Positions 45,003-64,000 of a DNA stretch of 64,000 bases are shown in pieces. Under the pieces are notes generated by a model. It was not told the DNA's origin, made no database searches, and worked only from the letters and a program-made list of their open reading frames with translations. The position numbers and the translations under genes were made by a program. The stretch lies in assembly GCF_000150275.1 (NCBI RefSeq), contig NW_002060974.1:342633-406632 (forward strand), in the 5' to 3' direction. Every line of letters starts with the position of its first letter. Position 1 is the stretch's first letter. The stretch comes from Trichoplax adhaerens. Its lineage: Eukaryota > Animalia > Placozoa.

Positions 45003-45280
45003 TCACTCTTTCAATATTAATTCGATTTGATCTGCTATGTCGTTGACTCCAACCTTACGTAATGCTGAAATTACTTCCTTATGATCAGCATCTTGGCCTT
45101 TCTTTTGCTTCCACAACTCTAGTACTCGATATTTTTTTTCGTAATCACTATCAATTTTAGTGCTTGATACAATTTCATTTATCTCATTATATGTTAAATG
45201 TAATGAAATTCCCAATTGAAATAATTTACTTATAGGAAGTTTCGTAGCGATCATGTCGAAGTACGTCCTAAAAAGTTCTT
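45003..45280 (-). CDS. Terminal Death-domain exon of the NB-ARC/Roc-COR gene
   Basis: FDMIATKLPISKLFQLGISLHLTYNEINEIV...YEKKYRVLELWKQKKGQDADHKEVISALRKVGVNDIADQI: canonical DD pattern with a phase-1 acceptor. Confidence 0.85.
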
Positions 45281-48200
45281 CTATATTAAAACACAGTTGA
45301 TAGTATTAGTAAATTAGATCCATTTGATTCTCCCAGCTTATAATTAGGTCTAAATAGTATCATTGATAGTCATTATCTTCAACAATTTCACCTCATCACA
45401 ACCGTACATCAAACTGGTATGCTAGTTTATAAAGCAAACTGTTACTAATACTACCTGTTAACAAACGCTAATGTCAGTATGAAAATAAATTTACATACAA
45501 TGAGCCATTATAATAAATCATTGGAAGTGTACATTAAAAGCTATTGCATACTGTATCATAAAATATTTATTTCTTGATAATGACAAAGTTTTACATTTCT
45601 CATACTATTATAACAATTATAAATTGTTGAGAGATGAAATAAAGACCGTAAATTTTTTTTAAAATATCAAGTAAGTATACGCGTGTTACCTTGTCTACTC
45701 GAGGTTATTGGTATTTGATGTTTCTGTTGGACTTGTTGCGGTTGATCTAGATAATATAGTTTCGTTACATTAGATCTTTTAAAACCGAAGATTGTAATTT
45801 TCCGTAACCAATTAACGGACGATCAAAATTTTGATTAGATAAATACAATCACTTCTTATTCATACAATAAATTATTATAGTTCAATAAATGGTGAGGTTT
45901 ATTCAGTAAACGTAGAGTAAGTTATAAGCCTTGTCCTACAAAAAAGCCCTTTACTACATGATCTATCAATCAAAATTACTAAAATATCTGACATATACAG
46001 TTCTGGGTGATTTTAAAGCGCTCAAACTAGATAAGCTTTACTAAAATTGTAACGCTGTATGTGGTCGGAGTTATCCTAATATTAAAAATCTATTTAAGAC
46101 CACAACAATGATGAATAAAGCGCTTTTAGTGGTTTCTCCAAGTTCTTCGTGTGTTACACTGACTACTATAGTTGGTTAGGGATCGCTAAAGAAAGCGTCG
46201 TTCCTTTTTTAGTAGATTGCCTAGTGCCTTCACTCTAGATTGGTTCTAGTCTTTATTACTGGCGTAACGATATAGCAGTACTAGTGATAAGAGAGAAAAT
46301 ATCTCTTCTCACTGTGGTATTATACTTAGTGAAATTTTAATCTGTAAGAACTAGTTATAAACAAAAATAAAGATTAAGAATTGAATTTGAGCACTACAGA
46401 TGAGGAAATGGCTCCTAGCTCGTTAAGCTAGACTATGAACTTTGAAGCAAGAATAAACACCTGCTATTTTGTAATAATAAAGCCAATTGGCTTATAAAGT
46501 GATGATCGAAAAATAGAAAAACTTGTTGCTAATAAATGTTGCTATGTACGTAGAGAATCATCGTCATTCATTCAGAAATGATACAAAATGCAACTATGTT
46601 CTATAAAACTAAATTAATAATCTCTCAAAATTGAAACGATACCGGCATTTGTTAGACTAGCATCAATATTCTTAAGCGTTAATCATATATTATCCATTTT
46701 AATCCTAACATGCTTAGAATTGGCCAGTGATGATCGATTCATCAAGCCTGTCCAATTCTTGCAAACTCATTTCAATATTCTATTCTTATTGCAAGCGAAC
46801 AATCGATAAATGAAATCTACTGCAGTTTCATTATAATCGTAACTTATTAGTCAATTTGTAAACTGCGCCATTGGTATCCTATTTCTATATTCGTGAAGCT
46901 TTATATACTCTATATCAGATAATAACTTGAAATACAACTATTAAGATGATTGATCGCGCGTTTGATTTTAGGTATGGTAATGAATATTGAGCAAATGAGT
47001 CAAAATAGAAGATTATCTTGTTAGTGACTTGATAAAGAATAGTGTGATCGATAGTCTAAGCGGACTTACGATAGCTTTGCTGATTGTTATCTTGTCTTGT
47101 ATTTTGAGTTTGAATTTGAGTTTGTAGTTCATCTTGATTGCCTTTGGATGAAAAAAATCAGAACACATTGGCTATTGCATAGAAGAATGCAATAGATGAA
47201 ATTTTCGAATGTATGGTATGTTATTGTATAAGTTTGTAAATTTACAAATACCTAAGCTTTAAAATATCGGTAGCGATTTAGCTTACTGTCATATGTATGA
47301 GAAGATTATTGCAAGACTTGTTCTACATGTAACATTATGATCTTATATAGAAGATGCCTAGTATAGTAATATCCTAATATACGAATACTTATCATATACC
47401 GTTTAAGTACTGTATTGTATTACATTCATAATGTACGACATCATGACTACATATAGACGACATGCTATACATATAAAGACATTATCTCAATCCCATCTAA
47501 AACCTATAAATACCCTTGTACGCTAACTCGTTAGTCAGTTCCTACATTCCTGCTATCTCAAATACCTTATCTATAACAACCATATCATTGTTAGTCTGTA
47601 ACTTGTATCTCAATAAAATCCTTTATACCTTCTATCATCGTCTACCTTAAAATACTTTACGCTACTTAAAGAAGATATCATTACACTACAGAGTAGAATC
47701 TGGCTTTCTACGCTTTAGTAATACTTATAACAATCAAAATTCAAAACTATTCTAGATATTCATATTTAAGAATAAGCAAACTATTTGCAGAAAAAATTAT
47801 AAAGTAGTGACAACAAGGTAAGACTACTGAAAAAACTGAAAATTGTAAAGAAAAGTTTAGATTTGCTCTGCAACTGTTGTAGAGAAGCTTGTATTGCAAA
47901 GTACTGTTGGTGGGAAAGACGAAATTTTCGAATGTATGGAATGTTGCCACACAAGTTTGTGAATTGCAAATATCTAAGCATTAAAATATCAACATCGATA
48001 TAGTTTACAGTCAGATATATAACTGATTGAGCCATGAGCTTAACGTTGAAGTTAAATTCTTACATGAAATCGAAATTAGTAATATATTAACAGATGAAAG
48101 CGCGGCTGCATGTATTAGTCGTAGTGATAATTAGAGAATGGCATATATTCGAAACTTAATAGATCATGTACTAAAGTACCATACATAAACGATTGCATCG

Positions 48201-51200
48201 AGTAAAATTGAGAGTTCTTCTTACCAACAGTTTGTTTTTAGCTGCAGTTACAGCTTAGATTTTGTTGTAATAAAGCTTAATTCGATTTTAGATATCAAAT
48301 TAGTCTGATCTAAGTATGCAACACTTCTGCATATTGACAGTAACTTTCAACTAACGTCTTGTAAATACGAGTATAATCTACGAACCATTATTTACTTATA
48401 TTGCCCATTACATAATACTAGTTAAAATTATTTATCTAAATAAAACTTTAAAAATTGATATTAAATTATTGAATTATAGAATAATTTTAGTACAAGAATG
48501 ATACAGCTAAATATATTATAGTATCTACAGATAATGAATGAAGTTAAGTTACCAATAATTTAAATTAAAGCAAAGGTAATACCTTCATCTCCTTTTGATA
48601 TAACCCTTCGCTTTTTGGATCGTGCTCGTGTATCTAAGATAAACGTAGCGTAATAAAATTACTGATTTCCATCACAATTCTGTATCTGATATTGAACTAA
48701 AATAATACTGCTCAAATACTATGAAGTTAATTTACCAATAATTTAAATTTAAATTAAAACAAACGTAATACCTTCATCTTCTGTGAGGGAAACCCTTCGC
48801 TTATTGAATGGTGCTTGCGCATCTGAAGATAGAGGGAGTGTAGCAAAATTACTTGATTTCTATCATAATTCTGAATGTATAATATAATATCAATCTAATA
48901 CAACTAAATACTCAGTTACGGTCTATCATCTGTGATGGAGATTAGTTTTTAGAATTCTCCTTCAAGTGTTTGTAATGTGATTATTCTAGCTTAGTTTTGG
49001 TATCGTTTTAAGTATTCTAGCTTTAAAAATATGACTTATCTGGCTGATTGCAACAGTAGATTTTACTTACTATAGTATCTTAGCATATTGTAAACCCGAC
49101 TGCTTTATTCGGGTTGAAATTTAAGATAATTATTAGCATAATTGTTTTTAAAATTAGATGTCATAAGATTGTAATTCAAATTTTGTAATAGAATATATTT
49201 GTAGCTAATTTCGATCATTAATTACAGTAGAAGTTAATATCACTATGATTTCATACTGTATGAACCCGAATTTTCGATCTGGGTTCCAATTTAAGATTAT
49301 TGCTTTGTCTTAGTATATACTGTCGCAATCTACAATTTTAAGCTAAACTATGATTATATTAATTTAGTAATTTAACTAGCTTGTTCAGTTCCTAATTTCG
49401 ATCGTAATAGACAGGCCTGCAACGAGGACTTATACCAATAGAGTATATTATAACATTAAAACTCTTCTAGTAGTTCTATCCTCGACAGTAATAGCAACTA
49501 GAGAAGTTTAATCGCTCACAAAAAGAAGATATTTGTGACACAAGGGTATAATTTATCGTTATTGCGTGTGTTTGATTACTAGTATAATTTAGAGTACTTT
49601 AGAATGATAGTTAGGTAGTCTAATACCACTAACTACTCCGCGTAGCATATAAAAGGTGGCATAGTTCGATAGTCTAGTACAGCTGAAGATAGAAAAGACG
49701 AGAAAAGTCAAGGATAATCGCGAGTTATCTCATTGATAGTTTGGTTGGTTTAGGCGGTAGTTCTGCTCATATTTTGTTACTCATTTAAGAAATTTTGCTA
49801 AGATTGTTGTTGAAGTTATAATAAACTAGTGTTTCCCCTAATTTATTTTGTTTGGAATTCCATTATTAATAGCTTAATTTAACTTAGCTTTTTTCGTTCA
49901 ATAATAACATCCATGAAATAAAATTTACAGTGGCACTACATTAACGTTAGGCGGATTACGTAAAAGTATTCTTTACACGTTACCCGTAACTTATGTCAAC
50001 TTTGTGCAAAATTCTTAACTAAAGCGAAGCATTTACTCTATTTTTGATAATTTTTGATAATTTTGATAAGGTTCAGCAGTAAATAATTCTTGTAGATTCT
50101 ACAGCCCAGATGCAATCTCGTTTCTACTGCAATAAAGTTACTAACTTCATTGAACTCTATATGATATTAATTAGTAATAGCATCACTGTGTAATAAAGCG
50201 TCTAACTTTAAGCAAAGACTTCCGTATCCTGAGAAATATACTTTAATTTAAAGAAGACTGTTGCAAAATACATTTTACTGAATAGAACTTGGCTTTTCAC
50301 GCTTTGGTAGTACTTGTAACGATCAAAATTCAAATGATTGCATACGGTCATATTTAAAAATAAACACATCATTGCAGAAAATTGTAAAATAGTGATAGCA
50401 AGATAAGACTACTGAAAAACGGATGATTGTAAAGAAAAATTTCAGTTTACTCTGCAAGATTGCAGCAAATTTCGTATTGTAAAGTACCGTCCTGCAACGT
50501 AGGTGAAAATGGGGAAATTTTTGAATGTACGGAATGTTGTTACACAACTTTGTCAATTTGCAATTATCTAAGCTTTAAAAATATCGACATCGATATAGTT
50601 CACTGTCAGTTGCAAGAGCTAATTGCGCCGTGAGCTTAGCACTATAAAGAAAGCGGTTACAAGTATTAAGATGATTACGTCTTATTCTAAAATAGTATCG
50701 TACTTTATTACTAATTTAAAGCTAATCATAACTTTATCAATAAACATATGTGATAGTTCATCATCTTTCTTTAGATTTTGCAATGGCTGAGCAGTACTGA
50801 GCAGCCTTAAGAATGACATGTAAATAGAAAAGTTAAAATCGATAGAACTTATAATTGACGATTCAATGTTTCTCTTTTTAACCAATGCTAACTTTTATCC
50901 GTAAATATCATTAATATTCTTTCTTATCTCCACTAACACTTTAATCCAATATGATAAAAGTAGAGAAAAATTTCAGTTAGCTTGGCGCAATTTATGTATA
51001 TGTAAAAAGTTTTTTACACAACTTAGCAAATTTAGTTTAATTAATTAAATTTGAACTTAGCATTAAAGTTCAATTCTGATACAGAATCAGAATTACTAAT
51101 ACATTAGTGTATGTTGTTCCAATATCTACTACGATTCTGTTGTAATAAACCTTGGCAGCTACAACAGTTTTATTTGCAAAAAAACGGATCAACAGCTATT

Positions 51201-54200
51201 TACTTGATGCTATACAGTACGTATAATAGAATATCTAATGTAGCAAGAATGAACTATTCTCTCTGAACTACATCGAGAATATTTCTCTTACTGAGCCGTA
51301 ATTGTTGAAAGTGCAAGGGAAATCTGGTAGTAGGGTTAAAGAAAAAGTTCAGTCATCTACCCTATCAACGAAAATAGCTCGGTGAGATCTCTTTCTACTT
51401 CTGAATTCACGGTTTCATATCGTAAGTAAGTTTCCCGAACAAGTCATTAACTCATTATTGAACTATTAATTAACAACTGCTAACTACTAAAGTTACATTT
51501 AAGGATATCTTCAACGCTACGTACTGCCAGATAAGCATATATACAACGTAAAATAGAGATAATATACACGCCGCGAAAATTGACTTCCTTGACAGTGCCT
51601 GAGCACTTTTAATTTGTTCAACTGTAGGTTTTCATGGAATGTACTACCGTAGTAGAGTTAATTAATTAGTTCCATTAAACTGACGGTATGAGAATTCTTT
51701 TCTTAGTTTTTGATATGACCACCAAAATCAAGCTTCTCTCAGCTAACCAACTGCGTGTTTTTTTTTATATAAGAAATGTTCCTAACATGTAGCATGACTA
51801 CAAACGAAGAACTATGTTGATTAGAATGAAAGGACTCTTGCGTTTTGAAACGACCAACAACCGAATAGTTCCGAATTGGAAAAATGCGAATTTAGGTTTT
51901 CAAAATAATTAGTGCTGCAATTGTTTCAAATATTCACGATGTAAAAACGTACTCAATAAATTTTATGGCTTTAATGACAACCACAAAAAAAATTTGAATC
52001 TTAACTTTACTGGCACTTCTTCAGTTTTCCAGTATGTACGCGTATTTTTCATATAAACCGGCCCAAAATGAGAAAATTTGCTACAAATAATAGTTGGCAG
52101 TAAATCTCAACTCAATACTTCATCTTACCTGCTAATTCTTCTTCGAAAATCTGCCATTGATTCACTGATTCTTTTGGAACTTTAGTCATGCACTCGCTAC
52201 ATTTGATTTTAGCTGTTTTTTTTTTACAAAGCTTATTAGCAACATCGATCATTTCTTTACAATCCCTTCCACCGCATTTAAAATAAAATTGACATTTAGT
52301 AGAGTCAAATTTTGGCATTTTCTCTGCTATTACCTTTTTTAATTTATCTCGAATAATAAAGTGCGGCTTATGCCGACGAATTGATTTGGTAATACGTTTT
52401 TTACCAACCCTACTTAATTTTTTCGATGAGGGCCCATAGCATAATTGCATTCCAATAAATGAGTCTTTTTTCTCGACAACTATCCTACATCTACAATCTT
52501 CCATATAAAATATTGCACAACGATCATGCGCTTCAACTTTAGGATTATTCCAAACTTTTAAACAGGCTGACAGATGACAATAAAATATTCCATCAGGTAT
52601 ATAGGGTATCTCGGTGCTATCATACCCTATATATAACCAATCTGATTTCCAATAATTTTCTCTTTTTACCTTGGCAGAAGAACGCAGCAAATAGGGTACG
52701 AAATAAAGGCGATTAAGATCATCGCTGCTGTTATGATCCTTGTTTACATTCTCAATCTTACAAATTATACTGTAATGCTCCATCAATCTTAAAATATACT
52801 CTGTCTTCTTTTTATCCAGATTAAATTTTTTTATTACAAAATTGATACATTTTTCTGACAGTTTACCAGTTTTGGAAGCGTTTCTGATGAGTAAATTTAC
52901 TTCCTCATTCTTACTTATACTCGCAGGTTCAATTGAGGACTTCGATGGATTGCCTAATTTTATAATCGATCGAAGTATATCGAGTAACCAATCAAGATTA
53001 GTTACAATTATTCCATCTAATCCTTCTTCCTCACAAAACACGATGTCGCCTATATCATGTAAAAATCGTAACATATACCGAAATTTTTCATCGTCTTCGT
53101 ATAAATTGTAATTTTGAGATAACTGTTTGATTTCTTCAAATGTCATAATGTCACCTATCTTACTTATAATTTCATTATTCTGAGTTTCTACCGCAGCTGT
53201 TTTATTGTTCCGGGGATTTCCAATATGGAGTAATGATGTCATAATATACCATTTAACAGGAATCTTTTCTAGAGACAGCAAAGCTGTGGCAAATTTTTGG
53301 ATGTAATCGTGGAGAACTTCACTAGTTTTACGACGTTGGTCAATGGATGCTGGAGTGTGATCTGTTGGTTTGCAGTGAAATATGATACGTGAGCTACATA
53401 AATTTTTCGCAAACGGAGGCATAGCTTTAGCCAAGGAATGGCTAAAATCATCAAATTTTTTTAAACGTTTTTTCTCATCCTTTATCAGATCGCCATGCGA
53501 TGCGATCAAAATTATAACCGGTAAATGAAATTCTTCTTCTTTTTCATCAATGGTGACTTTAACCTTGCCTGCATCATTATAACTACCAATCATTGATGTA
53601 AGCCATTCTTGCATGGCTTGTCTATAGGTCATAGTAATTTCATTGCCGTCACGATCGATAATATTGTCATCAAAAGTACGTGTAATATTGAACACTAGAA
53701 TATAAAGGCTCTTTCCAGACAAAAATGGACGATGTGTTACATAATAGACAGCTTGGCCTCCAAAGTCGACGAATTTCCCGTATTGACTATCAACGTCAGT
53801 TTTCATCTTGTCCTCCAAACTTGTCTTTGTCAGAGCTTGTAATGGATCGTAGACAACATTACTCTCGTGATTTAATGCAGGCGTTGAGTTTGCGGATATA
53901 GCCCCTTCACCGTAATCTCTTTCTAGAGATTTCATTTCAGTGTCTGCTGTTGCAGACGTAGGTAATTCATTTGAAGTACTTAAATCGCTATAATCTCTTC
54001 CTGAGGATTTCATTGCCGAGTCTGTTATTGCGGGCGTAGGTATTTTATTTGAAGTAATTATATCATTCTCTACGTGCTGCTCACCTTCGGAATTAACGTT
54101 GGTGGTAAAATTTTTGCTAGCAGACGAGGTATCGCCTTCGCAATTTTGTTCCATACGCGTAGATAGTGGTTTGATATTCTGCTTATCAGCATTATTTATC

Positions 54201-57200
54201 ATATATGAATATACTTTTTCTTTTAATGCAATTCGATAATCAACTTTTCTTCTGTCTAAAACATCAAATGTCGTTAGCTTTATCAACTGCTGTATATCGT
54301 TTGCAATTTCCGTTTCGCTGCTAGGCTCAATGGATCCATCATTTAAAAAGGCGTTTATAATAGATGTTTTACCGACATTTTCAGGACCACCAATGACAAT
54401 TTTAATGAAATCTTTGTTCCTACTTCCCTCTTTTAATGCTTCATAGTAAGCTTTTAGATATTCTTTATCGTTGTTGGCTAAAGATAGATAAATTAATGAA
54501 GTTAATAAATAGCAGTGTCATGATTTATAATTCAAGTTAAATATCGCCTAGATAAATGTCTCTCAATTAATTATATATTTACGAGTATTCTATCAATTTC
54601 TAATAACGTTTTGATTAGAATTTCTTAATTAAGCGCAGTTCAGGCTACAGTCAACGAGAATTGATTAATATCTGAGCTATGCACTTATAATCATATTTAC
54701 TTTCGGTAGCTAATTCCAAAGCTCGCTGTTTCATCCACTCATCAGTTATATCAGATGTCAATATCTGTTCTACTAAGTTTACGTTGTGTAGTTTTAGCCT
54801 CTTTCCACGATCTTGCAGAAATGCAAGCACTTTATCAAATTTCTTCCAGTCCTTAATAAAATCGCGAATAAAGGATATCAGTAAATGAAAAGCAACACAA
54901 ATACGAAGCCGAATTTATGAAAGGGCTATTTATTAAGAAGCAAGTATACCCCTAATACCTATCCACGTTACACACAATCAAGTTTCATATATACGCCGAT
55001 TACAATAATACTAAGTAATTGAGTGATATTTAATTAAATTAAAGTGTTAAATCTAACACTTTATTAAATATTTAGTGTTTGAACAATCTCTTATTTCAGA
55101 AAGAGCTAAAAATAGCGTAACACTTGATAAGGCGATTTCAGTAAAAATTTGCAACGTATAAGCCTAGGTAATAAATGTCGATGCTACTAAGCTGTTCTAA
55201 TCTACTAAAGAAGTAAATTACCGATACCTGATGATTCTTTTTACAGTAGTTCATGTAGTTAGTTATATCGTTGATTAGCCCGGAAATTTCATTGTCAGAT
55301 TCAATTTTACGTGACATCCAGTTAAAGTCAGTCATGATGCTTTGCAAATCTTTATCACATTTACCCAATATAGCATGACAAACTGAATTTTGATAGAAAT
55401 AGTCGTCATCAGGGAAGGTATACCATCTACCTCTGCATCGACTACGATAACCATCAATTAATTTCTTGCTTAATTTTTCATCATAATCTTGGTTCGAGAC
55501 TTGCAAGCGTAGATGGTCCAGCATCAAACCATGTAAAACCCAGTATCTGAACGAATTAACAATATTTAATTCGATTAGTATCGTAGTAAATAGAAAATTA
55601 AGAATACTTGCTATATTGTTGGTGCTGGTTAAATGAGAATCTATACATTATATGTTGAATTCATGCTCTTGCGAAAATAATTACAATACGCTACTGTAGC
55701 AAGATTTTTTGATTAGAATAGTATGAAATCAATGGCTCATTTTTAGATCTACTTGCAAAATGCAACTGCTTAATACACTAGAAGTTAATAAAATGTTTCT
55801 AGAGCTGATTGCGAAACTGGCATAGTTTAATTAAAGCCAATAAATTCAAACTGTTTTGTAGCGTACTAAATCAAAGATCTTCTTGAACGAGATTTTAATT
55901 AAAGTTGAATGCTCCGATACTCTAGCTATGTATTATGAATATACCGAATGATCAAATACAATCATTATTGATGTTTAACGGCAATGAAATACGAGTAGCC
56001 TGTATGTTGTATAGAAGTGACAATTGCCTTTGCAACCCTACTAATTTGGTTGAAAATGAAGTCAAACCTATACTTGAGTCTTAAATGTGCAGTAAAATTT
56101 GAATGTTTATTAAAACTTAGGGGACAAGCTGTGTACAAGATATAAAAAATATTGTTTTAAATCATCTTAAGATCACGAATGTGAACACTTACTGTAAAAA
56201 TCGGTTACACTAAGGTAGATAAATCGATAACATGCTATCTTCAAACTGCAGAGTCAAATATCTACATACTTTAAATGTTCAATTATTGAATAAAACTAAG
56301 CGCAACGATTCAAAAACTTCGCCAATTTGGAAAATCAATGCTATTTGGCACTGTATGATATTACATTGCAATATATTAACCAGGGGAATTGTCTACTTTA
56401 GACTTCAAATTTGGGGTATCAGACTGTATGACGTTGATGTTTTCGCAACAGTCTCACAGAGCGTTAGGAAATACTTCCCTATCATTTAGAGCTTGTTACT
56501 AGTGATTTGATAAATGGTACCTTAGGCTTAATACAAAGACATTTGATGTCATGCATATGCATGACATCAACATTTACATACACGTTTAAAAACAATTACA
56601 CTTCTCATTTAAGGATGAAATATGACTGAAAACTGAAACATGAATATCCATTGCTATTTCGGATACTGCATACACGTTGGATATTTTATGTTGCATGCGT
56701 TGCTTATTTAGTTCCTAAACATGATGATAGAGCCATATCGTACTTACTTGCTTCCTTCGACGTATGTTAATAATGACCTATTTTGCATTTCCTTTAAAAT
56801 ACGGTTGGCATCCTTATCGTCACAGCTCCATACTGATGAAATAGATTCAATGGGGATGGACGCTCGCTTAAATACTGCCAGCAACTTAAATAATTCCCTG
56901 TCGGATTCGCTTAAAGATTCAATACTTGATTGCAATACACCATATAAATTGGTGTTGACACCTGTAATAGAATTTTTGGCTGTGTTCCATTCTTCATTTG
57001 TGCTTAGATTAAGGCCGCCAATTTCGGAAATTGCTAATGGTAGGTAAGCGCAACTTTCAAAGACGTTCTTGATAATTGGATTTGCACGTAAAACCTCAGA
57101 GTGAGCTACGTGATGCAACGCTAGCAATTCTACGCTTTCTTCAGGAGTCAACCGTTCCTGTACAGTATGGCGTAAAAATGTTTAAGTACATAAAAGATGC

Positions 57201-60200
57201 AACATTACTTTTTATTAAACTGCTTCTAAAATCGTGTGTCGAAAGGTAAACATAAAGGCCTAAAATTCACTTCAATCCTCTGACGGTAAAGCTAGTCTAG
57301 TTAACAATTACCGTGTCTAATTTAGTTCATAAACAAGTCGCATTGTGTGAATAATTATACACAAAATCAAATGAATACAAACCGGCATATTAAAACAGTC
57401 AAAATTAAGCTGGATTCCATCGTAGGTTAATCGTGAAGTAACGATTGATTTCTTAGCAAAGGATAAAAAATATTTGTAATGATCCTTCTTCGAGACGTCG
57501 TCGAAAATAAATAATGTATTGGCTATTTTGCTATTTTCTATCAAGAAATTACAAAGGAAATACAGTAATTATTTCTATCATTGTCTAACTTGATATCAAA
57601 TATTTTCATGAGTGAAGGACGTTGAAATTTTGTGCCTACCTCGTAGGTAATTATCAAGATATTCGCAAACTTCTCTTATTGACTTAATATTCTTATTCCA
57701 CACAGTGCCAAGACTGACACCCAAAACCTTCAGCTTTTGGGATAATTCATCATTTGATATATTACCTAGATACAATAATTGTTATAAATATTCAAATACA
57801 AAAATACCAAGAAACATAGAAAATATTTTATGGACGAATATGCTCATTGATCAAACCGGCATAGAATCTGCAGTTGTAAACAATCTTAAATTTTATTGCT
57901 ATTTCATTTATAAACCACTATTTTATCTTACCATACTTTTTTTAAATAGTTTATCAGCGTTATAATTAAAATATGAAGCAGCAGCATACATCACATTATT
58001 AGTTTATCTTTGTTGCGCTATTTTTAGGTATCGATATGCATATTGGATACGTACAGTGCAATGGGCCACAATCGTAGCACTGAAGTAATCAAAGTAAACC
58101 AACAACTGATTATAATTATAGACCTACTAAGGATAGATAGATATTCTCTGAACCTATATAATAGAGACAAGGACTACTAAACTCTCATAGTTTTCCATAA
58201 AAATATCCTAATCTCAAGCTTAAAGTTTATATACTTATAGGTTAGTTATCATTAAGAATACACTTTACCTATACGCTTGTAACAGTCTTTTACTAAAGAT
58301 GGCTAATAAATACAGGCTACGTAGACAAGGGGACAACTACATCATGCAGATTTGCTACCATACTCCCCCAAATCGATGAGTTTACTAATTTTGACTAACG
58401 CTAACTAGCAGATTAAATTAAGAACCCATTAATTTAAGTAGTAGTTTCATTGAGCTTGGAAAGGAAGCTAATCAAGTGTTTTGCTTTAGATAATATACAC
58501 TGTACAGTATTGTATCGGAAATTATGGCAGCGGTAATCATATACACGTTTTAACCTATAGTAAACATCCGATAGCACAAATTAATTCTACACTAAGCATT
58601 TTCAGTTCTATAATTATTCTATTTCAACATGTTAGATTCTTACGAAAATCATTTATAACACTAATAATATAAAATACTCTCCATTAATAAGTTATAGATC
58701 GAAAAATTAGCTGCAATAAATTTTGAAACTTACCAATCTTCATCCAATAACAACCATTTGATTTAAAGCAGCCATTGCTTACAGCTTGGCGTACAGACTG
58801 GCAAACAGCAATCGTTTTACCGCTGCCAGCCATCCCATGTATTAAAGCATGGCCGGGTGATTCATCGATATTCTTTAATTTATCGCAAATTTTATTAACG
58901 ATGTCCTTTCTTATAATGTAGTCACTTATCGAAGTTGGCGGTAGTTCACGAAGTGGAATTTCTGACAATAAAATAATTTACATAAAGATTTCTTATGAAA
59001 TACTGCTGTAAATCACACTAAATACAAATACCTTTCTAAGGCAGAAAAATTAGAATTGTTTAATGCGTAAATGCCATTTGACATTATGGCAAATAAATCA
59101 AATAGCATCATCTTAGTGATACTAGTTAAAGTAGAATAAATTATTTAAATAATTATATACAATTAGCACAGTATACTGACGGTCCAATTTTGAATGTAAA
59201 ATACAAACTGGAACATTCAATCAAAGATTACATAAAGTAGATTAATATTGACGAATGTACAGAAAAAAACACCGGGAAATAAAGATGTTCTTTCTATTGA
59301 AGTCTTCCTGCTAGATAACTTGGACACTGCAACATTAACAGAATTTAACACTGGGTCTTCAAGTGGTAAGATAAATAAAGCTTTGATATCTAGCTTATGA
59401 ATTATATCAATTTATAATATTATAAGATCTTGATTCTTCGTAGTTAAATGTGGTATTAGAATTAATTTAATGACTTTAAATTTTTGAGAAAATTTAAAGT
59501 CGAATAATTCAATGAAAGTTTAAATGATCTTAAATTTTTTCTAGACAGAATATCTGCTAGATTCTATTGACGGATTCTACATATTTCTTACAATCATCTA
59601 CTATTACATAAGCTATTATCATTTGTGTTGTATTTAATTCTACAATCGTATTTTCTGCATGTATTCTATCTTTAAAGCTAACAAATATTATTAATGTCTA
59701 CCTCAGATCTCGATAGTTACAATAGTTGCAATGTTAGTATTCGTGTCTTAGGAGACATGCTTAAGTATGAAATTGTTATTTACATTCAAATATCTATTTA
59801 GTCAAGTATGATAACTAGCTCCAAATTATGTAGTGTATCACATGAGCGAAGGTTTACTAGTAATTAATCGGGACTAAGTAATCAGCTGAAATCACTACAA
59901 ATGGTTTGATCGCAATAATGTATTTACTATTAAAAATATGCTGACAGCATAGTAAATATGTTTACAATGACTGACAGAGTACGTACAGCTAAAGGGGATA
60001 ATGACCAATAAAAGTAGTTACTTATGCACGTTATAGTGTGTTGCGCCTTAAAGTGTGCGCATTTCGAAAAGATTCTAGTTACTATACCGTAAGTGAGAGA
60101 AGTAGTCTTGCTTACTAAAGGTAAACTTCACTTCCTGTAAGTCACATAATACTAAATAATGATATCTTGCTATCTAAACTTTATTTAAAAAACTACTGAC

Positions 60201-62843
60201 TAAGTCATTAGCTAATTGATTCATCCGTCTTAGTAAATGATGCAATGAACTAGAGGAAAGATGGTAAGCTTTTCAACTTATTGAATAGGCTATTTAGTAT
60301 ACAGTTAGATCCAAGCATCATTGTAGCTTACTGAAAATATACTGTTACTAGTTTTGGTTTAAAATTATGCATTATGTATAGGTGAAGAAGTGATTTTATA
60401 AACGCTTTCTTGAAAAGCCGGTAGTAAAGATAAATGAGATGCGACGATCAATTTAGTATATGTGTACTGTGTAGTGTACGGCTTATTAGGCCTACACAAA
60501 ACTACTATAATTAGCTGAAATCACTGCAATGTGATAATCCATTGCGATTTTTCGTTGTATCAGTAAAAAATCTTCGTTAGCGATCAGTTTGGGTAATTTT
60601 GATAAGGTTCAGCAGTAAATAGTTCTTGTCGATTCTACAGACCAGATGCAATCTCGTTTCTACTGCAATAAAGTTACTAACTTCATTGAACTCTATATGA
60701 TATTAATTTGTAATAGCATCACTGTGTGATAAAGCGTCTAACTTTAAGCAAAGACTTCCGTATCCTGAGAATAAATTACGTCTTCCACCAAGGACCACAT
60801 TAGCTACGACTACCTCAACTTCGAAGGTGAAATCTCCTGCTTATACGTACATTTGGTTGCAAAGTATCATCAAGATACAAAGATCAACATCTATCTTAAT
60901 TAGCCCAGGATTTCGTTACTTGCATATCTCAAGGTGTTAAGGTTACCTAATACAGCATCTCTAAGAACTACTGAAATCTATACTTTTTCTAGTCTGAGTT
61001 TTGTAATCGCGTAGAGTTTAGAATGTAAATGTTTACTAATACTATTATAACCGCAATAAAGCGGGAAAAATATTGGTATGTGTGAGCTTTAATTATTCAA
61101 CTCGTATTTTTCAAAAGTCGAAAAGATCATCAACAAGGTAACTCTAGTTAAAATAAAGGTCTTTACCCCAAGTATATATTTAAAAAAGCTTACTAACTCC
61201 TATTTCATAGCGTTTTTAAGATCAAAATTATGATTTATCTCAAAGTTATCCGGAAATGAAATGCAAATGACACCTGAAGAACTGTTCTGAATTAAGCAAT
61301 TTAGGAAAAACTCCATATGGTACGGCATATACCACAGAGATAGCTTATACGTAAATGCAAACTGAATAACATTAGACTACTAAAGAGAACAACCAATCAT
61401 AGTAACATCAGTGTTATCAGTAATCATGATATTTGTTACAGTATTATTACTCTGTTAAGTCGTAGGTGTTAAATTTATTTATGAAAACGTGGTACCGCTT
61501 GTTAACTAATAATATTCTTCCTTATATAATTCCAATGTACGTGATATACTTAAACTCAGCTTCATTACCACAAGCTTCTTGAGAATACAAAGAGCAAATA
61601 ATCCATGAAAAGATAATTAAAGTGAAGATTGCTGCAGGAACTGTACTATTGAACTGACTGCGCAGGCTAAATACTGCTTATTGCCATCAAATTGCGTTAG
61701 TTGCGGTATTATCGAGAATTTAAAGGATGTGATACCCTCAAAAACTATTCTAGAGGATAATATTTTCAAAATTTAGCGTACAGAATTTATCTTTAACTTA
61801 ATATATTGTCATGCTATATTATTTCATATATACAACTGAGCGTAATGTGGCCCAAAATAGATCGTGCCTGAAGCTTATTCGGTATAAAATATCAATGGAA
61901 AATTTTGAGAAAATTTCTAGTCAAGTAATTTAATGAAAATTGATATGATTTTAAATTTTTTCAAGACAGAATATTTGTTGGATTCTGTTAGTATATCAAG
62001 TTTTTTGCAATCGTCTAACACCACATGAACTATTATCATCTACGTTGAATTTGATTTTACAATCAATATTACCTTCTACATTGACTACATCTCTAAAGCT
62101 AACAAATATGGTTAATACCCGTATCTACCTCAAATCTAGATAGTTGCAGTAGTTGTAGTGTTAGTATATCTTACGTTACTTTACAACATCTAACGCTCCT
62201 CTGTAATAACTATAGTATTTTTATAGGATTTATGGTCCAAAGTAATGAATCTATTTTCTATTAAACTATTTATTTCAATCTTTCAACAGTAATATACCCT
62301 ATTAGTATCTTTGCGGAGATATAGATGCTGATAATCGTCGCTAAAAAACTGATTTGGGTTATAACGCAAAGTTTAATATGAAATCAGAGTCTTGTTGTGT
62401 TACGCTTGAGATACGCTATCGTATCTACAGTAAATTAAAAATAGTCCATGAAAATTAATTTATCATAAATTGTGTAAATAATGAAAAGAAAATTTTGATA
62501 AACACTTTCTGTTTATAGCATAAAAGCTTACCATCTTCTTTTACAGCATTGGATTTCCTTTTTGAATTTTTATATGTAGAAATAACTTTACACATACGAT
62601 GATCTTCAGCTACAGAACGCAGCCCGCTTTTGAAGAGTGCTTCAACTAATGCACTCTTTGTGTAACTCCGACCTTTCCTACTCGCATACATACTCAACAT
62701 TTGCGCACATTGATCGTCAACTGATCCATTATTTTCAGCTATAATTTTTTGGATGTCGCGTTGATCCATTCCAAATTCTCTTGCCAAAGTTTTCCACTCC
62801 GTTCCGATATCTTTTGCGATTTTGCTGTTATACTTCTTGGCTG
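45003..62843 (-). CDS. Death domain - Apaf-1-like NB-ARC - Roc-COR - Death domain fusion protein (5' end missing, at least ~1,537 aa)
   Basis: Hand-spliced exons (minus), frame-compatible with no stops: 62843-62532 (DD), 59326-59273, 58961-58734 (Walker A GMAGSGKT), 57765-57640, 57537-57383 (Walker B FIFDDV, sensor TSR), 57157-56748 (HD1 YLPLAI, WHD), 55546-55228 (LHG, HD2), 54851-54701, 54477-52129 (Roc GPENVGKT, DFGGQ, SHGD; COR), 48822-48772, 48633-48583, 47141-47070, 45746-45690, 45280-45003 (DD, stop). The NB-ARC-to-Roc join is well supported; the links to the two DD exons and the microexons are less certain. Confidence 0.72.
47691..48045. repeat. Dispersed intronic repeat, ~350 bp (other copies at ~50275-50640 and partial ~47160-47295)
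   Basis: Shared anchors: tggcttt...cgcttt.gta.tactt, caaaattcaaa, taagactactgaaaaa, aaatttt.gaatgta.gg.atgtt, atctaagc.ttaaaatatc.acatcgatatagtt. Confidence 0.85.
48530..48880. repeat. Tandem duplication (~190 bp unit), each unit containing a 51-nt microexon
   Basis: atgaagttaa.ttaccaataatttaaatt...gtaataccttcatct...aacccttcgctt...atct.aagata...aaaattact occurs twice. Confidence 0.9.
50060..50233. repeat. ~175 bp near-identical dispersed repeat (second copy at ~60596-60771)
   Basis: ttttgataaggttcagcagtaaat...ccagatgcaatctcgtttctactgcaataaagttactaac...gacttccgtatcctgagaa occurs at both positions. Confidence 0.9.
52129..54477 (-). CDS. Roc-COR (Roco GTPase) exon, a single 2,349-nt exon
   Basis: YYEALKEG...IKIVIGGPENVGKTS (G1), FVDFGGQAVYYVTHRPFLSGKSLYILVFNI (G3), ILIASHGD (G4), then COR motifs IPVKW, MLRFLHDIGDIVF, LDWLLDILRSII, YFVPYLL, IPDGIFY. 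Confidence 0.92.
54701..58961 (-). CDS. Apaf-1-type NB-ARC module (6 exons)
   Basis: Colinear similarity to Apaf-1 as recalled: LIHGMAGSGKT...CF...YWMKIG; LFIFDDV; SIVTSR; CAYLPLAISEIGG; LAVF; SSVW; LKEMQNRSLL; WVLHGLMLDHL; YFYQNSVCHA; DFNWMSRKI. Confidence 0.9.
59480..59740. repeat. Diverged ~260 bp duplication (second copy at ~61900-62165)
   Basis: Shared anchors: ttttgagaaaattt, aatgaaa, taaatttttt..agacagaatat, ctattatcat, taaagctaacaaatat, tctacctca.atct.gatagtt. Confidence 0.8.
62532..62843 (-). CDS. N-terminal-side Death-domain exon (phase 1-1)
   Basis: IAKDIGTEWKTLAREFGMDQRDIQKIIAENNGSVDDQCAQMLSMYASRKGRSYTKSALVEALFKSGLRSVAE: classic DD (W..LAR.LG....I..I; ML..W/Y; L..AL...G....AE). 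Confidence 0.88.
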
Positions 62844-62875
62844 CTACAATAATTTTATTTTATTTGCAAAAATGA

Positions 62876-62925
62876 NNNNNNNNNNNNNNNNNNNNNNNNN
62901 NNNNNNNNNNNNNNNNNNNNNNNNN
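62876..62925. other. Assembly gap (50 N)
   Basis: Run of N characters. Confidence 1.
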
Positions 62926-64000
62926 ATAGTATGAAATCAATGGCTCATTTTTAGATCTACTTGCAAAATGCAACAGCTTAATACACTAGAAGTTAATAAA
63001 ATGTTTCTAGAGCTGATTGCGAAACTGGCATAGTTTAATTAAAGCCAATAAATTCAACTGTTTTGTAGCGTACTAAATCAAAGATCTTCTTGAACGAGAT
63101 TTTAATTTAATAAAGTTGAATGCTCCGATACTCTAGCTATGTATTATGAATATACCGAATGATCAAATACAATCATTATTGATGTTTAACGGCAATGAAA
63201 TACGAGTAGCCTGTATGTTGTATAGAAGTGACAATTGCCTTTGCAACCCTACTAATTTGGTTGAAAATGAAGTCAAACCTATACTTGAGTCTTAAATGTG
63301 CAGTAAAATTTGAATGTTTATTAAAACTTAGGGGACAAGCTGTGTACAAGATATAAAAAATATTGTTTTAAATCATCTTAAGATCACGAATGTGAACACT
63401 TACTGTACAAATCGGTTACACTAAGGTAGATAAATCGATAACATGCTATCTTCAAACTGCAGAGTCAAATATCTACATACTTTAAATATTCAATTATTGA
63501 ATAAAACTAAGCGCAACGATTCAAAAACTTCGCCAATTTGGAAAATCAATGCTATTTGGCACTGTATGATATTACATTGCAATATATTAACCAGGGGAAT
63601 TGTCTACTTTAGACTTCAAATTTGGGGTATCAGACTGTATGACGTTGATGTTTTCGCAACAGTCTCACAGAGCGTTAGGAAATACTTCCCTATCATTTAG
63701 AGCTTGTTACTAGTGATTTGATAAATGGTGCCTTAGGCTTAATACAAAGACATTTGATGTCATGCATATGCATGACATCAACATTTACATACACGTTTAA
63801 AAACAATTACACTTCTCATTTAAGGATGAAATATGACTGAAAACTGAAACATGAATATCCATTGCTATTTCGGATACTGCATACACGTTGGATATTTTAT
63901 GTTGCATGCGTTGCTTATTTAGTTCCTAAACATGATGATAGAGCCATATCGTACTTACTTGCTTCCTTCGACGTATGTTAATAATGACCTATTTGCATTC
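62926..64000. repeat. Near-identical copy of ~55718-56790 (NB-ARC intron plus the 3' end of the WHD exon)
   Basis: Direct match at an offset of ~7.2 kb; the ORF-track entries 56232-56489 and 63443-63700 differ at one residue. Confidence 0.95.

What the first reader, a model, noticed from the sequence alone, without database searches (positions are those of the whole stretch)
45003..62843. Dual-NTPase death receptor-like gene: DD - Apaf-1 NB-ARC - Roc-COR - DD, with the Roco GTPase in place of the WD40 sensor
Seen: the Apaf-1-like HD2 exon (ending 54701, phase 1) joins in frame, across a 223-nt GT-AG intron, to a 2,349-nt Roc-COR exon (54477-52129). That exon ends at a strong donor (G|GTAAGA) and can continue through four phase-1 microexons to a C-terminal Death domain; a second DD exon lies upstream. 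Both P-loops are intact (GMAGSGKT; GPENVGKT). Established: Apaf-1 is CARD-NB-ARC-WD40, and Roco proteins (LRRK2, DAPK1, MFHAS1) use Roc-COR as a GTP-dependent dimerisation switch. Inference: a STAND ATPase oligomeriser and a GTPase dimeriser in one chain, capped by two DDs, could be an apoptosome/inflammasome-like platform gated by GTP rather than cytochrome c. Early-branching animals are known to have unusual Roco and NB-ARC domain mixes, so this exact architecture may already be catalogued; I cannot check that, and I know of no functional study of it.
Basis: partly seen in the sequence, partly recalled or inferred. Interest (0 to 1): 0.9.

Follow-up and report, generated by a model that had tools for sequence, protein, structure and literature searches.

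The report
Apaf-1-like ATPase fused to Roco GTPase
A gene of the simple animal Trichoplax adhaerens makes one spliced mRNA that joins an Apaf-1-type cell-death ATPase to a LRRK2/DAPK1-type Roc-COR GTPase with a Death-domain tail; this is a rare pairing of two molecular switches that sits in public databases but has never been studied.

Summary
The window is Trichoplax adhaerens. The gene is the public model TRIADDRAFT_62071 (XP_002118035.1).

**Confirmed**
Contigs of four sequencing runs from four studies (one on record as RNA-Seq) carry the 54701/54477 junction, a 223-nt GT-AG intron.
- Single contigs of 3.1-3.8 kb join the WHD, HD2 and Roc-COR exons in frame.
- The N-terminal ~545 residues align to Apaf-1 from the NBD to the end of HD2 (E 1.6e-21). 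Roc-COR starts where the Apaf-1 WD40 repeats would start.
- A model of the 2,349-nt exon has the LRRK1 / C. tepidum Roco fold.
- The donor at 52129 is used.

**Likely, not proven by RNA**
- The C-terminal Death domain. The Trichoplax sp. H2 orthologue model and the TPR-Roc-COR-Death paralogues support it.

**Unproven**
- The upstream Death domain. Its exon has no start codon and copies a cassette that normally ends Roco genes. The assembly breaks just above it.

**Status**
- The architecture is already listed, without comment, in Civiero 2014 and Kamm 2019.
- I found it in no other protein.
- H1/H2 comparison shows no purifying selection (pN/pS about 1.6, not significant).
- The GTP-gated apoptosome idea is inference only.

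The parts
62532..62843 (-). Death-domain exon DD1. It is 312 nt with a phase-1 acceptor (ttgtag|) and a phase-1 donor (G|gtaagc). It has no start codon of its own. Its link to the gene is unproven.
   Evidence: Pfam Death 6.6e-13. Splice sites. It is one of at least 12 DD1-like exons in the genome and belongs to the 'type II' form with a tail and a donor. Only the JGI model P0001 uses it.
58734..58961 (-). NB-ARC exon 1. It carries Walker A (GMAGSGKT) and has a phase-1 acceptor. There is no in-frame ATG before the P-loop, so at least one coding exon must lie upstream.
   Evidence: Pfam NB-ARC 25.9 bits. Sequence. The 3,772-nt contig of run X15 reaches about the 5' edge of this exon.
57640..57765 (-). 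NB-ARC exon 2 (126 nt, phase 1-1).
   Evidence: Boundaries read. Both P0001 and P0151 use it. It is covered by the upstream 510 nt of X15 contig 1.
57383..57537 (-). NB-ARC exon 3. It carries Walker B (LFIFDDV) and sensor-1 (TSR).
   Evidence: The loose end at 57158 in four runs matches 57384-57413 exactly. Aligned to Apaf-1.
56748..57157 (-). NB-ARC end (the LPLA motif) plus the winged-helix domain.
   Evidence: Pfam NB-ARC and Dark_WHD. RNA joint 55546/56748 in four runs.
55228..55546 (-). HD2 exon a. It holds the 'LHG' motif that stands in place of the Apaf-1 LHD.
   Evidence: Pfam APAF1_C 2.5e-7. RNA joints on both sides.
54701..54851 (-). HD2 exon b. It ends in phase 1 at 54701.
   Evidence: RNA joint 54477/54701 in four runs with flanks of at least 150 nt. 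In the Apaf-1-like paralogues this exon runs about 12 codons further.
52129..54477 (-). Roc-COR exon of 2,349 nt (783 codons, phase 1-1). It has G1 GGPENVGKT, G3 DFGGQ and G4-like SHGD. About 105 residues between G1 and G3 are disordered. COR-A, COR-B and a terminal 4-Cys motif follow.
   Evidence: Pfam Roc and COR-A above their cut-offs. AF2 model pLDDT 78.8, pTM 0.81. Foldseek top hits are LRRK1, C. tepidum RocCOR and LRRK2, E 6e-15 to 1e-11.
48772..48822 (-). Linker microexon a (51 nt, phase 1-1; DAQAPFNKRR...).
   Evidence: The X5 contig joins 52129 to 48822 exactly. Splice sites.
48583..48633 (-). Linker microexon b (51 nt, phase 1-1; DTRARSKKRR...).
   Evidence: The X15 contig joins 52129 to this exon with 1 mismatch. 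The H2 model P0151 uses it.
47070..47141 (-). Linker microexon c (72 nt, phase 1-1, Q/N-rich).
   Evidence: 100% match to P0151 residues 1402-1425. Splice sites. No RNA junction was seen here.
45690..45746 (-). Linker microexon d (57 nt, phase 1-1).
   Evidence: It encodes the HQPQQVQQKHQ... stretch of P0151. No RNA junction was seen here.
45003..45280 (-). C-terminal Death-domain exon DD2. The stop TGA is at 45005-45003. ATTAAA and AATAAA lie 30 and 94 nt downstream.
   Evidence: Pfam Death 3.1e-11. It is 40-41% identical to the C-terminal Death domains of the closest Roc-COR paralogues P0005 and P0013. 100% match to P0151. PolyA-like signals.
62926..64000 (.). Not part of the gene. This is a 99%-identical duplicate of 55718-56789, placed just beyond a 50-N gap (62876-62925). 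It is probably a mis-scaffolded piece of the second haplotype.
   Evidence: It is 99.7% identical to the H2 contig. The genome holds no second full copy of the WHD exon.

Best explanation
This is one expressed Trichoplax gene. Its product is a chimera of two signalling NTPases.

**Architecture**
- An Apaf-1-type STAND module (NBD-HD1-WHD-HD2) is followed directly by a Roc-COR GTPase tandem.
- Short basic/polar linker microexons come next, then a C-terminal Death domain.
- A further Death domain may sit at the N-terminus.

**Origin (inferred)**
- The gene most likely arose by exon shuffling inside the placozoan expansions of CARD-NB-ARC-WD40 (Apaf-1-like) genes and TPR-Roc-COR-Death (Roco) genes.
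- The Roc-COR module is a single exon bounded by phase-1 introns throughout the family. The linker and Death exons are also phase 1.
- The NB-ARC block therefore replaced the TPR block of a Roco gene. Seen from the other side, Roc-COR-Death replaced the WD40 sensor of an Apaf-1 paralogue, and the CARD exon was lost.

**Mechanism (inferred, not shown)**
- The Roc-COR tandem sits where every STAND protein carries its auto-inhibitory sensor.
- Its nucleotide state, or its COR-mediated dimerisation, would control whether the NOD can exchange ADP for ATP and oligomerise.
- Oligomerisation would cluster the Death domain(s) and seed a Death-domain signalling complex for cell death or innate defence.

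**C-terminal variability (observed)**
- Different linker exons follow the same donor in different runs.
For: **Shown**
- Identity with the public model P0001 and its H2 orthologue P0151.
- Spliced contigs in four runs from four studies carry the joints 55546/56748, 54850/55227 and 54477/54701. Single contigs of 3,090 and 3,772 nt span the WHD exon to the end of Roc-COR. There is no coverage of the 223-nt intron.
- X15 differs from the window at about 50 of 2,349 positions of the Roc-COR exon. That matches the 97.9% H1/H2 identity of this exon, so the same fusion appears to be transcribed in a second lineage, probably H2.
- Apaf-1 (1z6t) aligns at E 1.6e-21 from the NBD to HD2 residue 588, with Walker A, Walker B, sensor-1 and the WHD histidine conserved.
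- Roc and COR-A score above the Pfam cut-offs.
- The AF2 model matches LRRK1, CtRoco and LRRK2 Roc-COR with probability 1.00.
- The 52129 donor is used in three runs.
- DD2 is 40-41% identical to the C-terminal Death domains of the nearest Roco paralogues. Those paralogues are TPR-Roc-COR-Death.
- A phase-1 donor after COR-B is conserved in seven paralogous exons.
- The nearest NB-ARC paralogues have the same six-exon NOD layout and, where the upstream sequence is assembled, a CARD exon before it. No CARD exon is left in this window.

**Established knowledge used**
- The Apaf-1 WD40 repeats lock the ADP-bound NOD.
- Roc-COR proteins cycle between dimer and monomer with GTP (PMC5714945).
Against: - There is no biochemical or genetic evidence for any function.
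- H1 versus H2: the NB-ARC exons differ by 0 synonymous and 7 non-synonymous changes. The Roc-COR exon differs by 6.2 synonymous and 40.8 non-synonymous changes, pN/pS about 1.6. That fits relaxed constraint, diversifying selection or gene conversion, not purifying selection. The excess is not statistically significant.
- The Roc domain has a ~105-residue disordered insert between G1 and G3, and its sequence match to solved Roco proteins is weak (E 1.7e-4). GTPase competence is therefore an assumption.
- The WHD motif reads LHG, not LHD.
- The 5' end of the mRNA is unknown.
- Only the first junction of the 3' continuation was seen, and it differs between runs.
- Three of the four runs are only guessed to be RNA. 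The spliced contigs argue that they are.
Confidence: 0.6

Rival explanations
1. The upstream Death-domain exon (62843-62532) is not the N-terminus of this protein. It would be a duplicated copy of the C-terminal 'linker + Death' cassette of a neighbouring Roco gene. Either it is used by an upstream gene, or it is an internal exon of a longer read-through transcript (Roco - DD - NB-ARC - Roc-COR - DD). On this reading the gene is NB-ARC-Roc-COR-DD with an unknown short 5' exon.
For: - The exon has a phase-1 acceptor and no start codon.
- Its upstream 40 nt and acceptor are the same as in DD1-like exons that lie 1.5-6 kb downstream of Roc-COR exons on the same strand and end in a stop (C1098, C1404, C1383:432264).
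- All these copies are preceded at about 400 nt by a conserved 117-nt phase-1 linker exon.
- Run X9 shows that linker exon spliced to a Roc-COR donor.
- On the H2 contig a COR-B end exon lies just upstream, and the H2 model skips the Death domain.
- No other protein of 739-2,350 residues in the database carries a DD1-like domain.
Against: - Five 'type II' copies, this one included, share a tail (KNSKRKSNAVKED) and a consensus G|GTAAGC donor in phase 1. That matches the phase-1 acceptor of the P-loop exon.
- The P-loop exon needs an upstream coding exon, and DD1 is the only death-fold exon left upstream.
- Paralogues have CARD or Death, a linker of about 20 residues and then the same L-R-x-L-P motif.
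- The linker exon contains an in-frame ATG that could start a complete Death domain.
- The H2 contig has two scaffold gaps exactly where DD1 would lie.
Confidence: 0.45
2. The gene is a young, lineage-specific chimera produced by the high turnover of the placozoan NB-ARC and Roco clusters. It is transcribed and spliced but under little or no selection. The two NTPase modules would not work together.
For: - pN/pS is at or above 1 between H1 and H2, and the Roc-COR exon (97.9% identical) is more diverged than the locus as a whole (98.8%).
- The architecture was found only in Trichoplax H1 and H2, among the 150 best Roc-COR relatives and in the Atlas clusters.
- The locus is full of recent duplications, indels and transposon-like repeats.
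- The HD2b donor lies at a new position compared with the paralogues.
Against: - A 783-codon exon and 13 exons in all stay open in a genome of about 31% G+C, in both H1 and H2.
- All catalytic motifs of both NTPases are intact.
- Contig depth over the exons is steady in four studies.
- pN/pS above 1 is also the signature of immune receptors under diversifying selection, and the excess is not significant.
Confidence: 0.25
3. The NB-ARC exons and the Roc-COR exon belong to two adjacent genes that gene predictors fused only because the frames happen to match.
For: All the module exons are phase 1, so any prediction joins them in frame. The H2 model indeed fuses an upstream COR-B exon to the P-loop exon.
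Against: The junction 54701/54477 is present in contigs of four runs from four studies with flanks of at least 150 nt. Single contigs cross four introns from WHD to the Roc-COR donor. No contig covers the 223-nt intron.
Confidence: 0.02

Closest known systems
Apaf-1 (human/mouse; PDB 1z6t, 3jbt, 3sfz) and the placozoan Apaf-1-like paralogues (e.g. TRIADDRAFT_61232, CARD-NB-ARC-HD2-repeats)
   Same: NBD-HD1-WHD-HD2 aligned end to end (E 1.6e-21). Walker A and B, sensor-1 arginine, the LPLA-like motif and the WHD histidine are present. The exon layout of the NOD matches the paralogues.
   Different: There is no CARD exon and there are no WD40 repeats. Roc-COR begins where the Apaf-1 propellers begin. 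LHD reads LHG. The effector domain is a Death domain. The HD2b exon ends about 12 codons earlier than in the paralogues.
Trichoplax TPR-Roc-COR-Death Roco paralogues (e.g. RDD43187.1 'Nephrocystin-3' of Trichoplax sp. H2 = P0002; also P0005, P0007, P0013, P0022)
   Same: The Roc-COR exon is 37-47% identical, is a single exon, has a long insert between G1 and G3, and ends with the 4-Cys motif and a phase-1 donor. Repeated short linker exons and a C-terminal Death domain follow.
   Different: The N-terminal TPR array is replaced by an Apaf-1-like NOD. None of the 150 best relatives has this.
DAPK1 and other animal Roco proteins with a C-terminal Death domain
   Same: Roc-COR followed by a Death domain. 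More distant relatives found here have Ank or EH/Macro/SH2 modules, then Roc-COR-Death.
   Different: No kinase and no ankyrin repeats. A second NTPase of the STAND class lies upstream.
Roc-COR of LRRK1/LRRK2 and of Chlorobium tepidum / Methanosarcina barkeri Roco (PDB 8e05, 3dpu, 6hlu, 4wnr)
   Same: Fold of Roc, COR-A and COR-B (Foldseek E 6e-15 to 5e-8, probability 1.00). G1 and G3 motifs align.
   Different: Sequence identity is only 11-15%. There is a ~105-residue disordered insert in Roc and no LRR in front. Nucleotide-dependent dimerisation is untested.

Membership tests
Roco proteins | Roc (Ras-like GTPase) domain with G1 GxxxxGK[ST] and G3 DxxGQ | tested here: met
   Pfam Roc 34.5 bits (cut-off 27). 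GGPENVGKT and DFGGQ are in the exon. G1 and G3 align to M. barkeri Roco2.
Roco proteins | COR domain (COR-A and COR-B) directly after Roc, in the same chain | tested here: met
   Pfam COR-A 43.7 bits (cut-off 35.3). The AF2 model aligns over 570-600 columns to the RocCOR tandem of C. tepidum, LRRK1 and LRRK2.
Roco proteins | GTP binding and hydrolysis, and nucleotide-dependent dimer/monomer cycle | not testable with these tools
   Only motif integrity can be read. The long insert between G1 and G3 leaves switch I uncertain.
Apaf-1 / CED-4 type STAND ATPases (NB-ARC) | NBD-HD1-WHD-HD2 with Walker A and B, sensor-1 and the WHD histidine | tested here: met
   phmmer against Apaf-1 1z6t gives E 1.6e-21 over residues 51-588. 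Pfam NB-ARC and APAF1_C on the exons. The motif reads LHG instead of LHD.
Apaf-1 orthologue (apoptosome scaffold) | N-terminal CARD | tested here: not met
   There is no CARD match anywhere in the window. The only upstream death-fold exon is a Death domain.
Apaf-1 orthologue (apoptosome scaffold) | C-terminal WD40 propellers that bind cytochrome c | tested here: not met
   RNA joins HD2 directly to Roc-COR. No WD40 family was found in any exon. Kamm 2019 Dataset S3D lists the probable H2 orthologue (TrispH2_011729) without a repeat type and without the Panther APAF-1 tag.
Death-domain signalling proteins | Death domain (six-helix death fold, PF00531) | tested here: met
   DD2 43.7 bits and DD1 49 bits (cut-off 22.6). 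Only DD2 is tied to the gene, by the H2 model and the paralogues.
   No TNFR or other extracellular family appears in any exon. All recognised modules are cytoplasmic NTPase and death-fold domains. No dedicated transmembrane predictor was available.

The most novel reading that the evidence does not exclude
A new class of innate-immunity or cell-death switch, a 'NOD-Roco', in which a Roc-COR GTPase replaces the repeat sensor of a STAND ATPase. Assembly of an apoptosome-like Death-domain platform would then need two nucleotide checkpoints (GTP state, then ADP/ATP exchange). The output Death domain would be chosen from an array of alternative linker and Death exons by splicing.
Probability: 0.25. 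Interest if true: 0.75.

Novelty: new variant of a known kind. Interest (0 to 1): 0.5.

Why it matters
STAND ATPases (Apaf-1, NLRs, plant R proteins) and Roco GTPases (LRRK2, DAPK1) are each much-studied switches, and how each is regulated is still debated. A natural protein that puts Roc-COR in the sensor position of an Apaf-1-like NOD would be a compact system for two questions. Can a G-domain gate STAND oligomerisation? What does Roc-COR do to its neighbouring domains? The gene also illustrates how phase-1 module exons let early animals recombine death-fold, NOD and Roco parts. Its value is limited: the architecture seems confined to Trichoplax, it is already in databases, and it shows no sign of purifying selection so far.

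Tried and rejected
- **JGI's C-terminus.** The model ends with exon 51330-51271 after 52129. No run shows that joint, and only low-depth unspliced contigs cover 51200-51999. Rejected in favour of the microexon route.
It is absent from both gene models and I have no evidence for it. Left open, not adopted.
- **CARD exon or ATG-bearing first exon between 62532 and 58961.** No CARD-like match. DNA homology to the paralogues covers only the P-loop exon.
- **Flank upstream of the window.** It reads almost entirely N in the copy I was given. Whether those are assembly gaps or withheld sequence is unknown, so the true 5' neighbourhood could not be read.
- **Context of the other type II DD1 copies.** They lie on 2-7 kb contigs that end in repeats, or on a gap-ridden 18-kb contig. 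Uninformative.
- **Other proteins with a DD1-like domain** (739-2,350 residues). None apart from P0001.
- **Search for the fusion elsewhere.**
  - Phmmer with this gene's NB-ARC finds it in none of the 150 best Roc-COR representatives other than P0001/P0151.
  - Thirteen of the longest were scanned with Pfam and carry TPR, Ank, EH/Macro/SH2, TIR or glycosyltransferase modules instead.
  - The Atlas feature search gave only NB-ARC-only or Roc-COR-only clusters, with scores at or below 0.82.
- **Literature.** Searches for the locus tag gave nothing.
- **No joined protein of my own.** Searches were made exon by exon by reference, or with the public models P0001 and P0151 by id.


Full report
**What the window is.** The 787-residue translation of the long open exon finds a 100%-identical public protein: TRIADDRAFT_62071 of Trichoplax adhaerens (XP_002118035.1, UniRef 'Death domain-containing protein', 1,343 aa; P0001). 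The precomputed Pfam families for that protein are NB-ARC, APAF1_C, Roc and COR-A. Its 90% cluster holds one more member, RDD36259.1 of Trichoplax sp. H2 ('Apoptotic protease-activating factor 1, partial', 1,497 aa; P0151). The window is G000:C1383:342633-406632, and the gene lies on the minus strand.

**Check of the observation.** I scanned each open stretch separately with Pfam.
- Death, 62458-62859.
- NB-ARC P-loop, 58687-58977.
- NB-ARC plus winged helix, 56747-57181.
- APAF1_C, 55141-55647.
- Roc plus COR-A, 52115-54517.
- Death, 45006-45305.

The Roc-COR exon (54477-52129) is open for all 783 codons and enters and leaves in phase 1. The four microexons and the acceptor of the last Death exon have proper AG/GT borders, and all are phase 1.

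**RNA evidence.** I laid contigs of four runs from four studies on 51200-57199. One run (X15) is on record as RNA-Seq. The other three are only guessed to be RNA, but they carry spliced contigs.
- All four runs lack the 223-nt intron 54478-54700, with at least 150 nt on each side. On the minus strand the intron is GT..AG.
- All four runs also carry the joints 54850/55227 and 55546/56748.
- One contig of X15 (3,772 nt) and one of X5 (3,090 nt) run from the NB-ARC exons through HD2 into the Roc-COR exon. The X15 contig covers that exon to its donor.
- No contig covers the 223-nt intron. The other introns appear only in some runs and at roughly a tenth of the exon depth or less.
- X15 differs from the window at about 50 of 2,349 positions, which matches H1/H2 divergence. 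So the same fusion mRNA appears to exist in a second lineage, probably H2.

**The 3' end.** Contigs of X5, X9 and X15 stop matching the window at 52129 and continue with other letters.
- X15 continues with the 48633 exon (one mismatch), as in the H2 model.
- X9 continues with a 28-mer that is absent from the window.

That 28-mer starts a conserved 117-nt phase-1 exon. The exon occurs at eight or more places in the genome. At the six places where a DD1-like exon was also found, it lies about 380-410 nt upstream of that exon. The last 292 nt of the Roc-COR exon are single-copy in the genome, so the X9 contig comes from this gene or from an allele of it.

JGI's own terminal exon (51330-51271) has no joint in any run. 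The H2 model goes on through the 48633-type exon (twice), then 47141-47070 and 45746-45690 into the Death exon at 45280. DD2 is 40-41% identical to the C-terminal Death domains of the two nearest Roco paralogues. I regard the C-terminal Death domain as likely. Only its first junction was seen in RNA, and the tail appears to vary by splicing or by strain.

**The 5' end.** This part is unresolved.
- The P-loop exon has a phase-1 acceptor and no ATG before the P-loop, so coding sequence must lie upstream.
- DD1 (62843-62532) is also a symmetric phase-1 exon without a start codon.
- A 50-N gap begins 32 nt above DD1.
- Beyond the gap lies a 99% copy of 55718-56789. It is 99.7% identical to H2, so it is probably a stray piece of the other haplotype.
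- The sequence beyond the window reads N in my copy.

DD1 belongs to a family of at least 12 exons that are 80-95% identical. 'Type I' copies end in a stop soon after the domain. At the three loci with readable context they lie 1.5-6 kb downstream of Roc-COR exons on the same strand. 'Type II' copies, DD1 included, carry a tail (KNSKRKSNAVKED) and a G|GTAAGC donor. Both types share the same acceptor and upstream intron sequence.

On the H2 contig a COR-B end exon lies just upstream, and two scaffold gaps sit where DD1 should be. The H2 model joins that COR-B exon straight to the P-loop exon.

Three points favour an N-terminal DD1.
- The donor phase fits the P-loop acceptor.
- DD1 is the only death-fold exon left upstream. 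No CARD match exists in the window, whereas the two nearest NB-ARC paralogue loci with assembled upstream sequence have a CARD exon there.
- Paralogues show CARD or Death, a ~20-residue linker and then the same L-R-x-L-P motif.

I put the odds near even.

**What the modules are.** P0001 residues 19-543 align to Apaf-1 (1z6t) at E 1.6e-21. The alignment ends at Apaf-1 residue 588, the end of HD2. Walker A, Walker B (LFIFDDV), the sensor-1 arginine and the WHD histidine are conserved. The motif reads LHG, as another note of this scan said.

An AlphaFold model of the Roc-COR exon was built on 45 relatives. It has pLDDT 78.8 and pTM 0.81, with one disordered stretch at residues 105-208, between G1 and G3. 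Foldseek ranks LRRK1, the C. tepidum RocCOR tandem and LRRK2 first, with E 6e-15 to 1e-11. Sequence similarity to solved Roco proteins is weak (4wnr, E 1.7e-4).

**Relatives and origin.** The best Roc-COR relatives are TPR-Roc-COR, in about half of those scanned with a C-terminal Death domain. More distant ones carry Ank, EH/Macro/SH2, TIR or glycosyltransferase modules. A phmmer search with this gene's NB-ARC region finds it in none of the 150 best relatives apart from P0001 and P0151. The Atlas search found no mixed cluster.

The Roc-COR module is a single exon in some 40 paralogous loci, and it ends with a conserved phase-1 donor in seven of them. The NOD exon layout is shared with the Apaf-1-like paralogues, but the HD2b exon here ends about 12 codons early. 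The simplest history is exon shuffling between the two expanded families.

**Selection.** Comparing H1 with H2 exon by exon gives 0 synonymous and 7 non-synonymous differences in the NB-ARC exons. The Roc-COR exon has 6.2 synonymous and 40.8 non-synonymous differences, pN/pS about 1.6. By my own estimate the excess over neutrality is not significant. Even so, there is no trace of purifying selection, and the exon is more diverged (97.9% identical) than the locus as a whole (98.8%).

**What is already known.**
- Civiero et al. 2014 (PMC4104024) list at least 17 Trichoplax ROCO genes whose Roc-COR is flanked by CARD, death, TPR, LRR and 'AAA ATPase' domains.
- Kamm et al. [quoted passage not shown] It is the only one of 42 NOD genes with that entry, and the text does not comment on it. 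That this locus tag is RDD36259.1 is my inference.
- No paper in the library names TRIADDRAFT_62071.

**Verdict.** The architecture is a rare variant built from two known kinds of switch. It is catalogued but unstudied. The mechanism is inference, the N-terminal Death domain is unproven, and the 'death receptor' label is wrong.

**Method note.** I built and searched no joined spliced protein of my own. Searches used single exons by reference, or the public models by id.

Noticed in passing
window 62876-64000: A 50-N gap is followed by a 1,075-nt stretch that is 99% identical to 55718-56789 (the intron plus the end of the WHD exon). It is 99.7% identical to the Trichoplax sp. H2 contig. It looks like a mis-scaffolded piece of the second haplotype rather than a tandem gene copy, because the genome holds no second full WHD exon.
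   Followed up: partly
window 62532-62843; also G000 C991, C976, C1028, C1098, C1204, C1333, C1404:966527, C1383:432264, C1414:12491110 and 12544338: A family of at least 12 near-identical Death-domain exons comes in two forms: terminal with a stop, or with a tail and a GTAAG donor. Where the upstream sequence is assembled, each is preceded at about 400 nt by a conserved 117-nt phase-1 linker exon. Almost none appears in a gene model of 739 residues or more. On C1098 several different Death exons follow one Roc-COR exon, which suggests arrays of alternative C-terminal Death domains.
   Followed up: partly
window 48725-51630: This 2.9-kb segment, which includes microexon a at 48822, has no counterpart on the H2 contig. 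There, 48724-48343 is tandemly duplicated instead and gives two copies of microexon b.
   Followed up: partly
window 52129-52420: Runs of 'organism A' carry two sequence variants of the 3' part of the Roc-COR exon at similar depth. One shares letters with the H2-like run. A cluster of 15 differences lies in 52159-52240 in the H2-like run. This could be allelic haplotypes or a gene-conversion tract.
   Followed up: no
window 52130-52330 (end of the Roc-COR exon): Four cysteines (C-x4-C ... C-x2-C) sit at the end of COR-B. Two of the columns are more than 90% conserved across 46 relatives. This is possibly a zinc ribbon specific to this Roco subfamily.
   Followed up: no
window 53850-54165: A Ser/Thr/Asn-rich insert of about 105 residues, predicted to be disordered, lies between the Roc G1 and G3 motifs. 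Inserts of different sequence occupy the same place in the paralogues.
   Followed up: no
window 54707-54737: A 31-nt stretch of the HD2b exon also occurs in a 49-nt contig with depth about 472 in run X15. Loose ends flank the stretch in X4, X5 and X15. It is a k-mer shared with some far more abundant transcript.
   Followed up: no
window 59247-61891: This stretch is absent from the other type II DD1 copies, which jump from the 61891 equivalent to the 59246 equivalent. It contains an internal repeat (62167-61899 resembles 59740-59478). It is probably a transposon-like insertion in the first intron.
   Followed up: no
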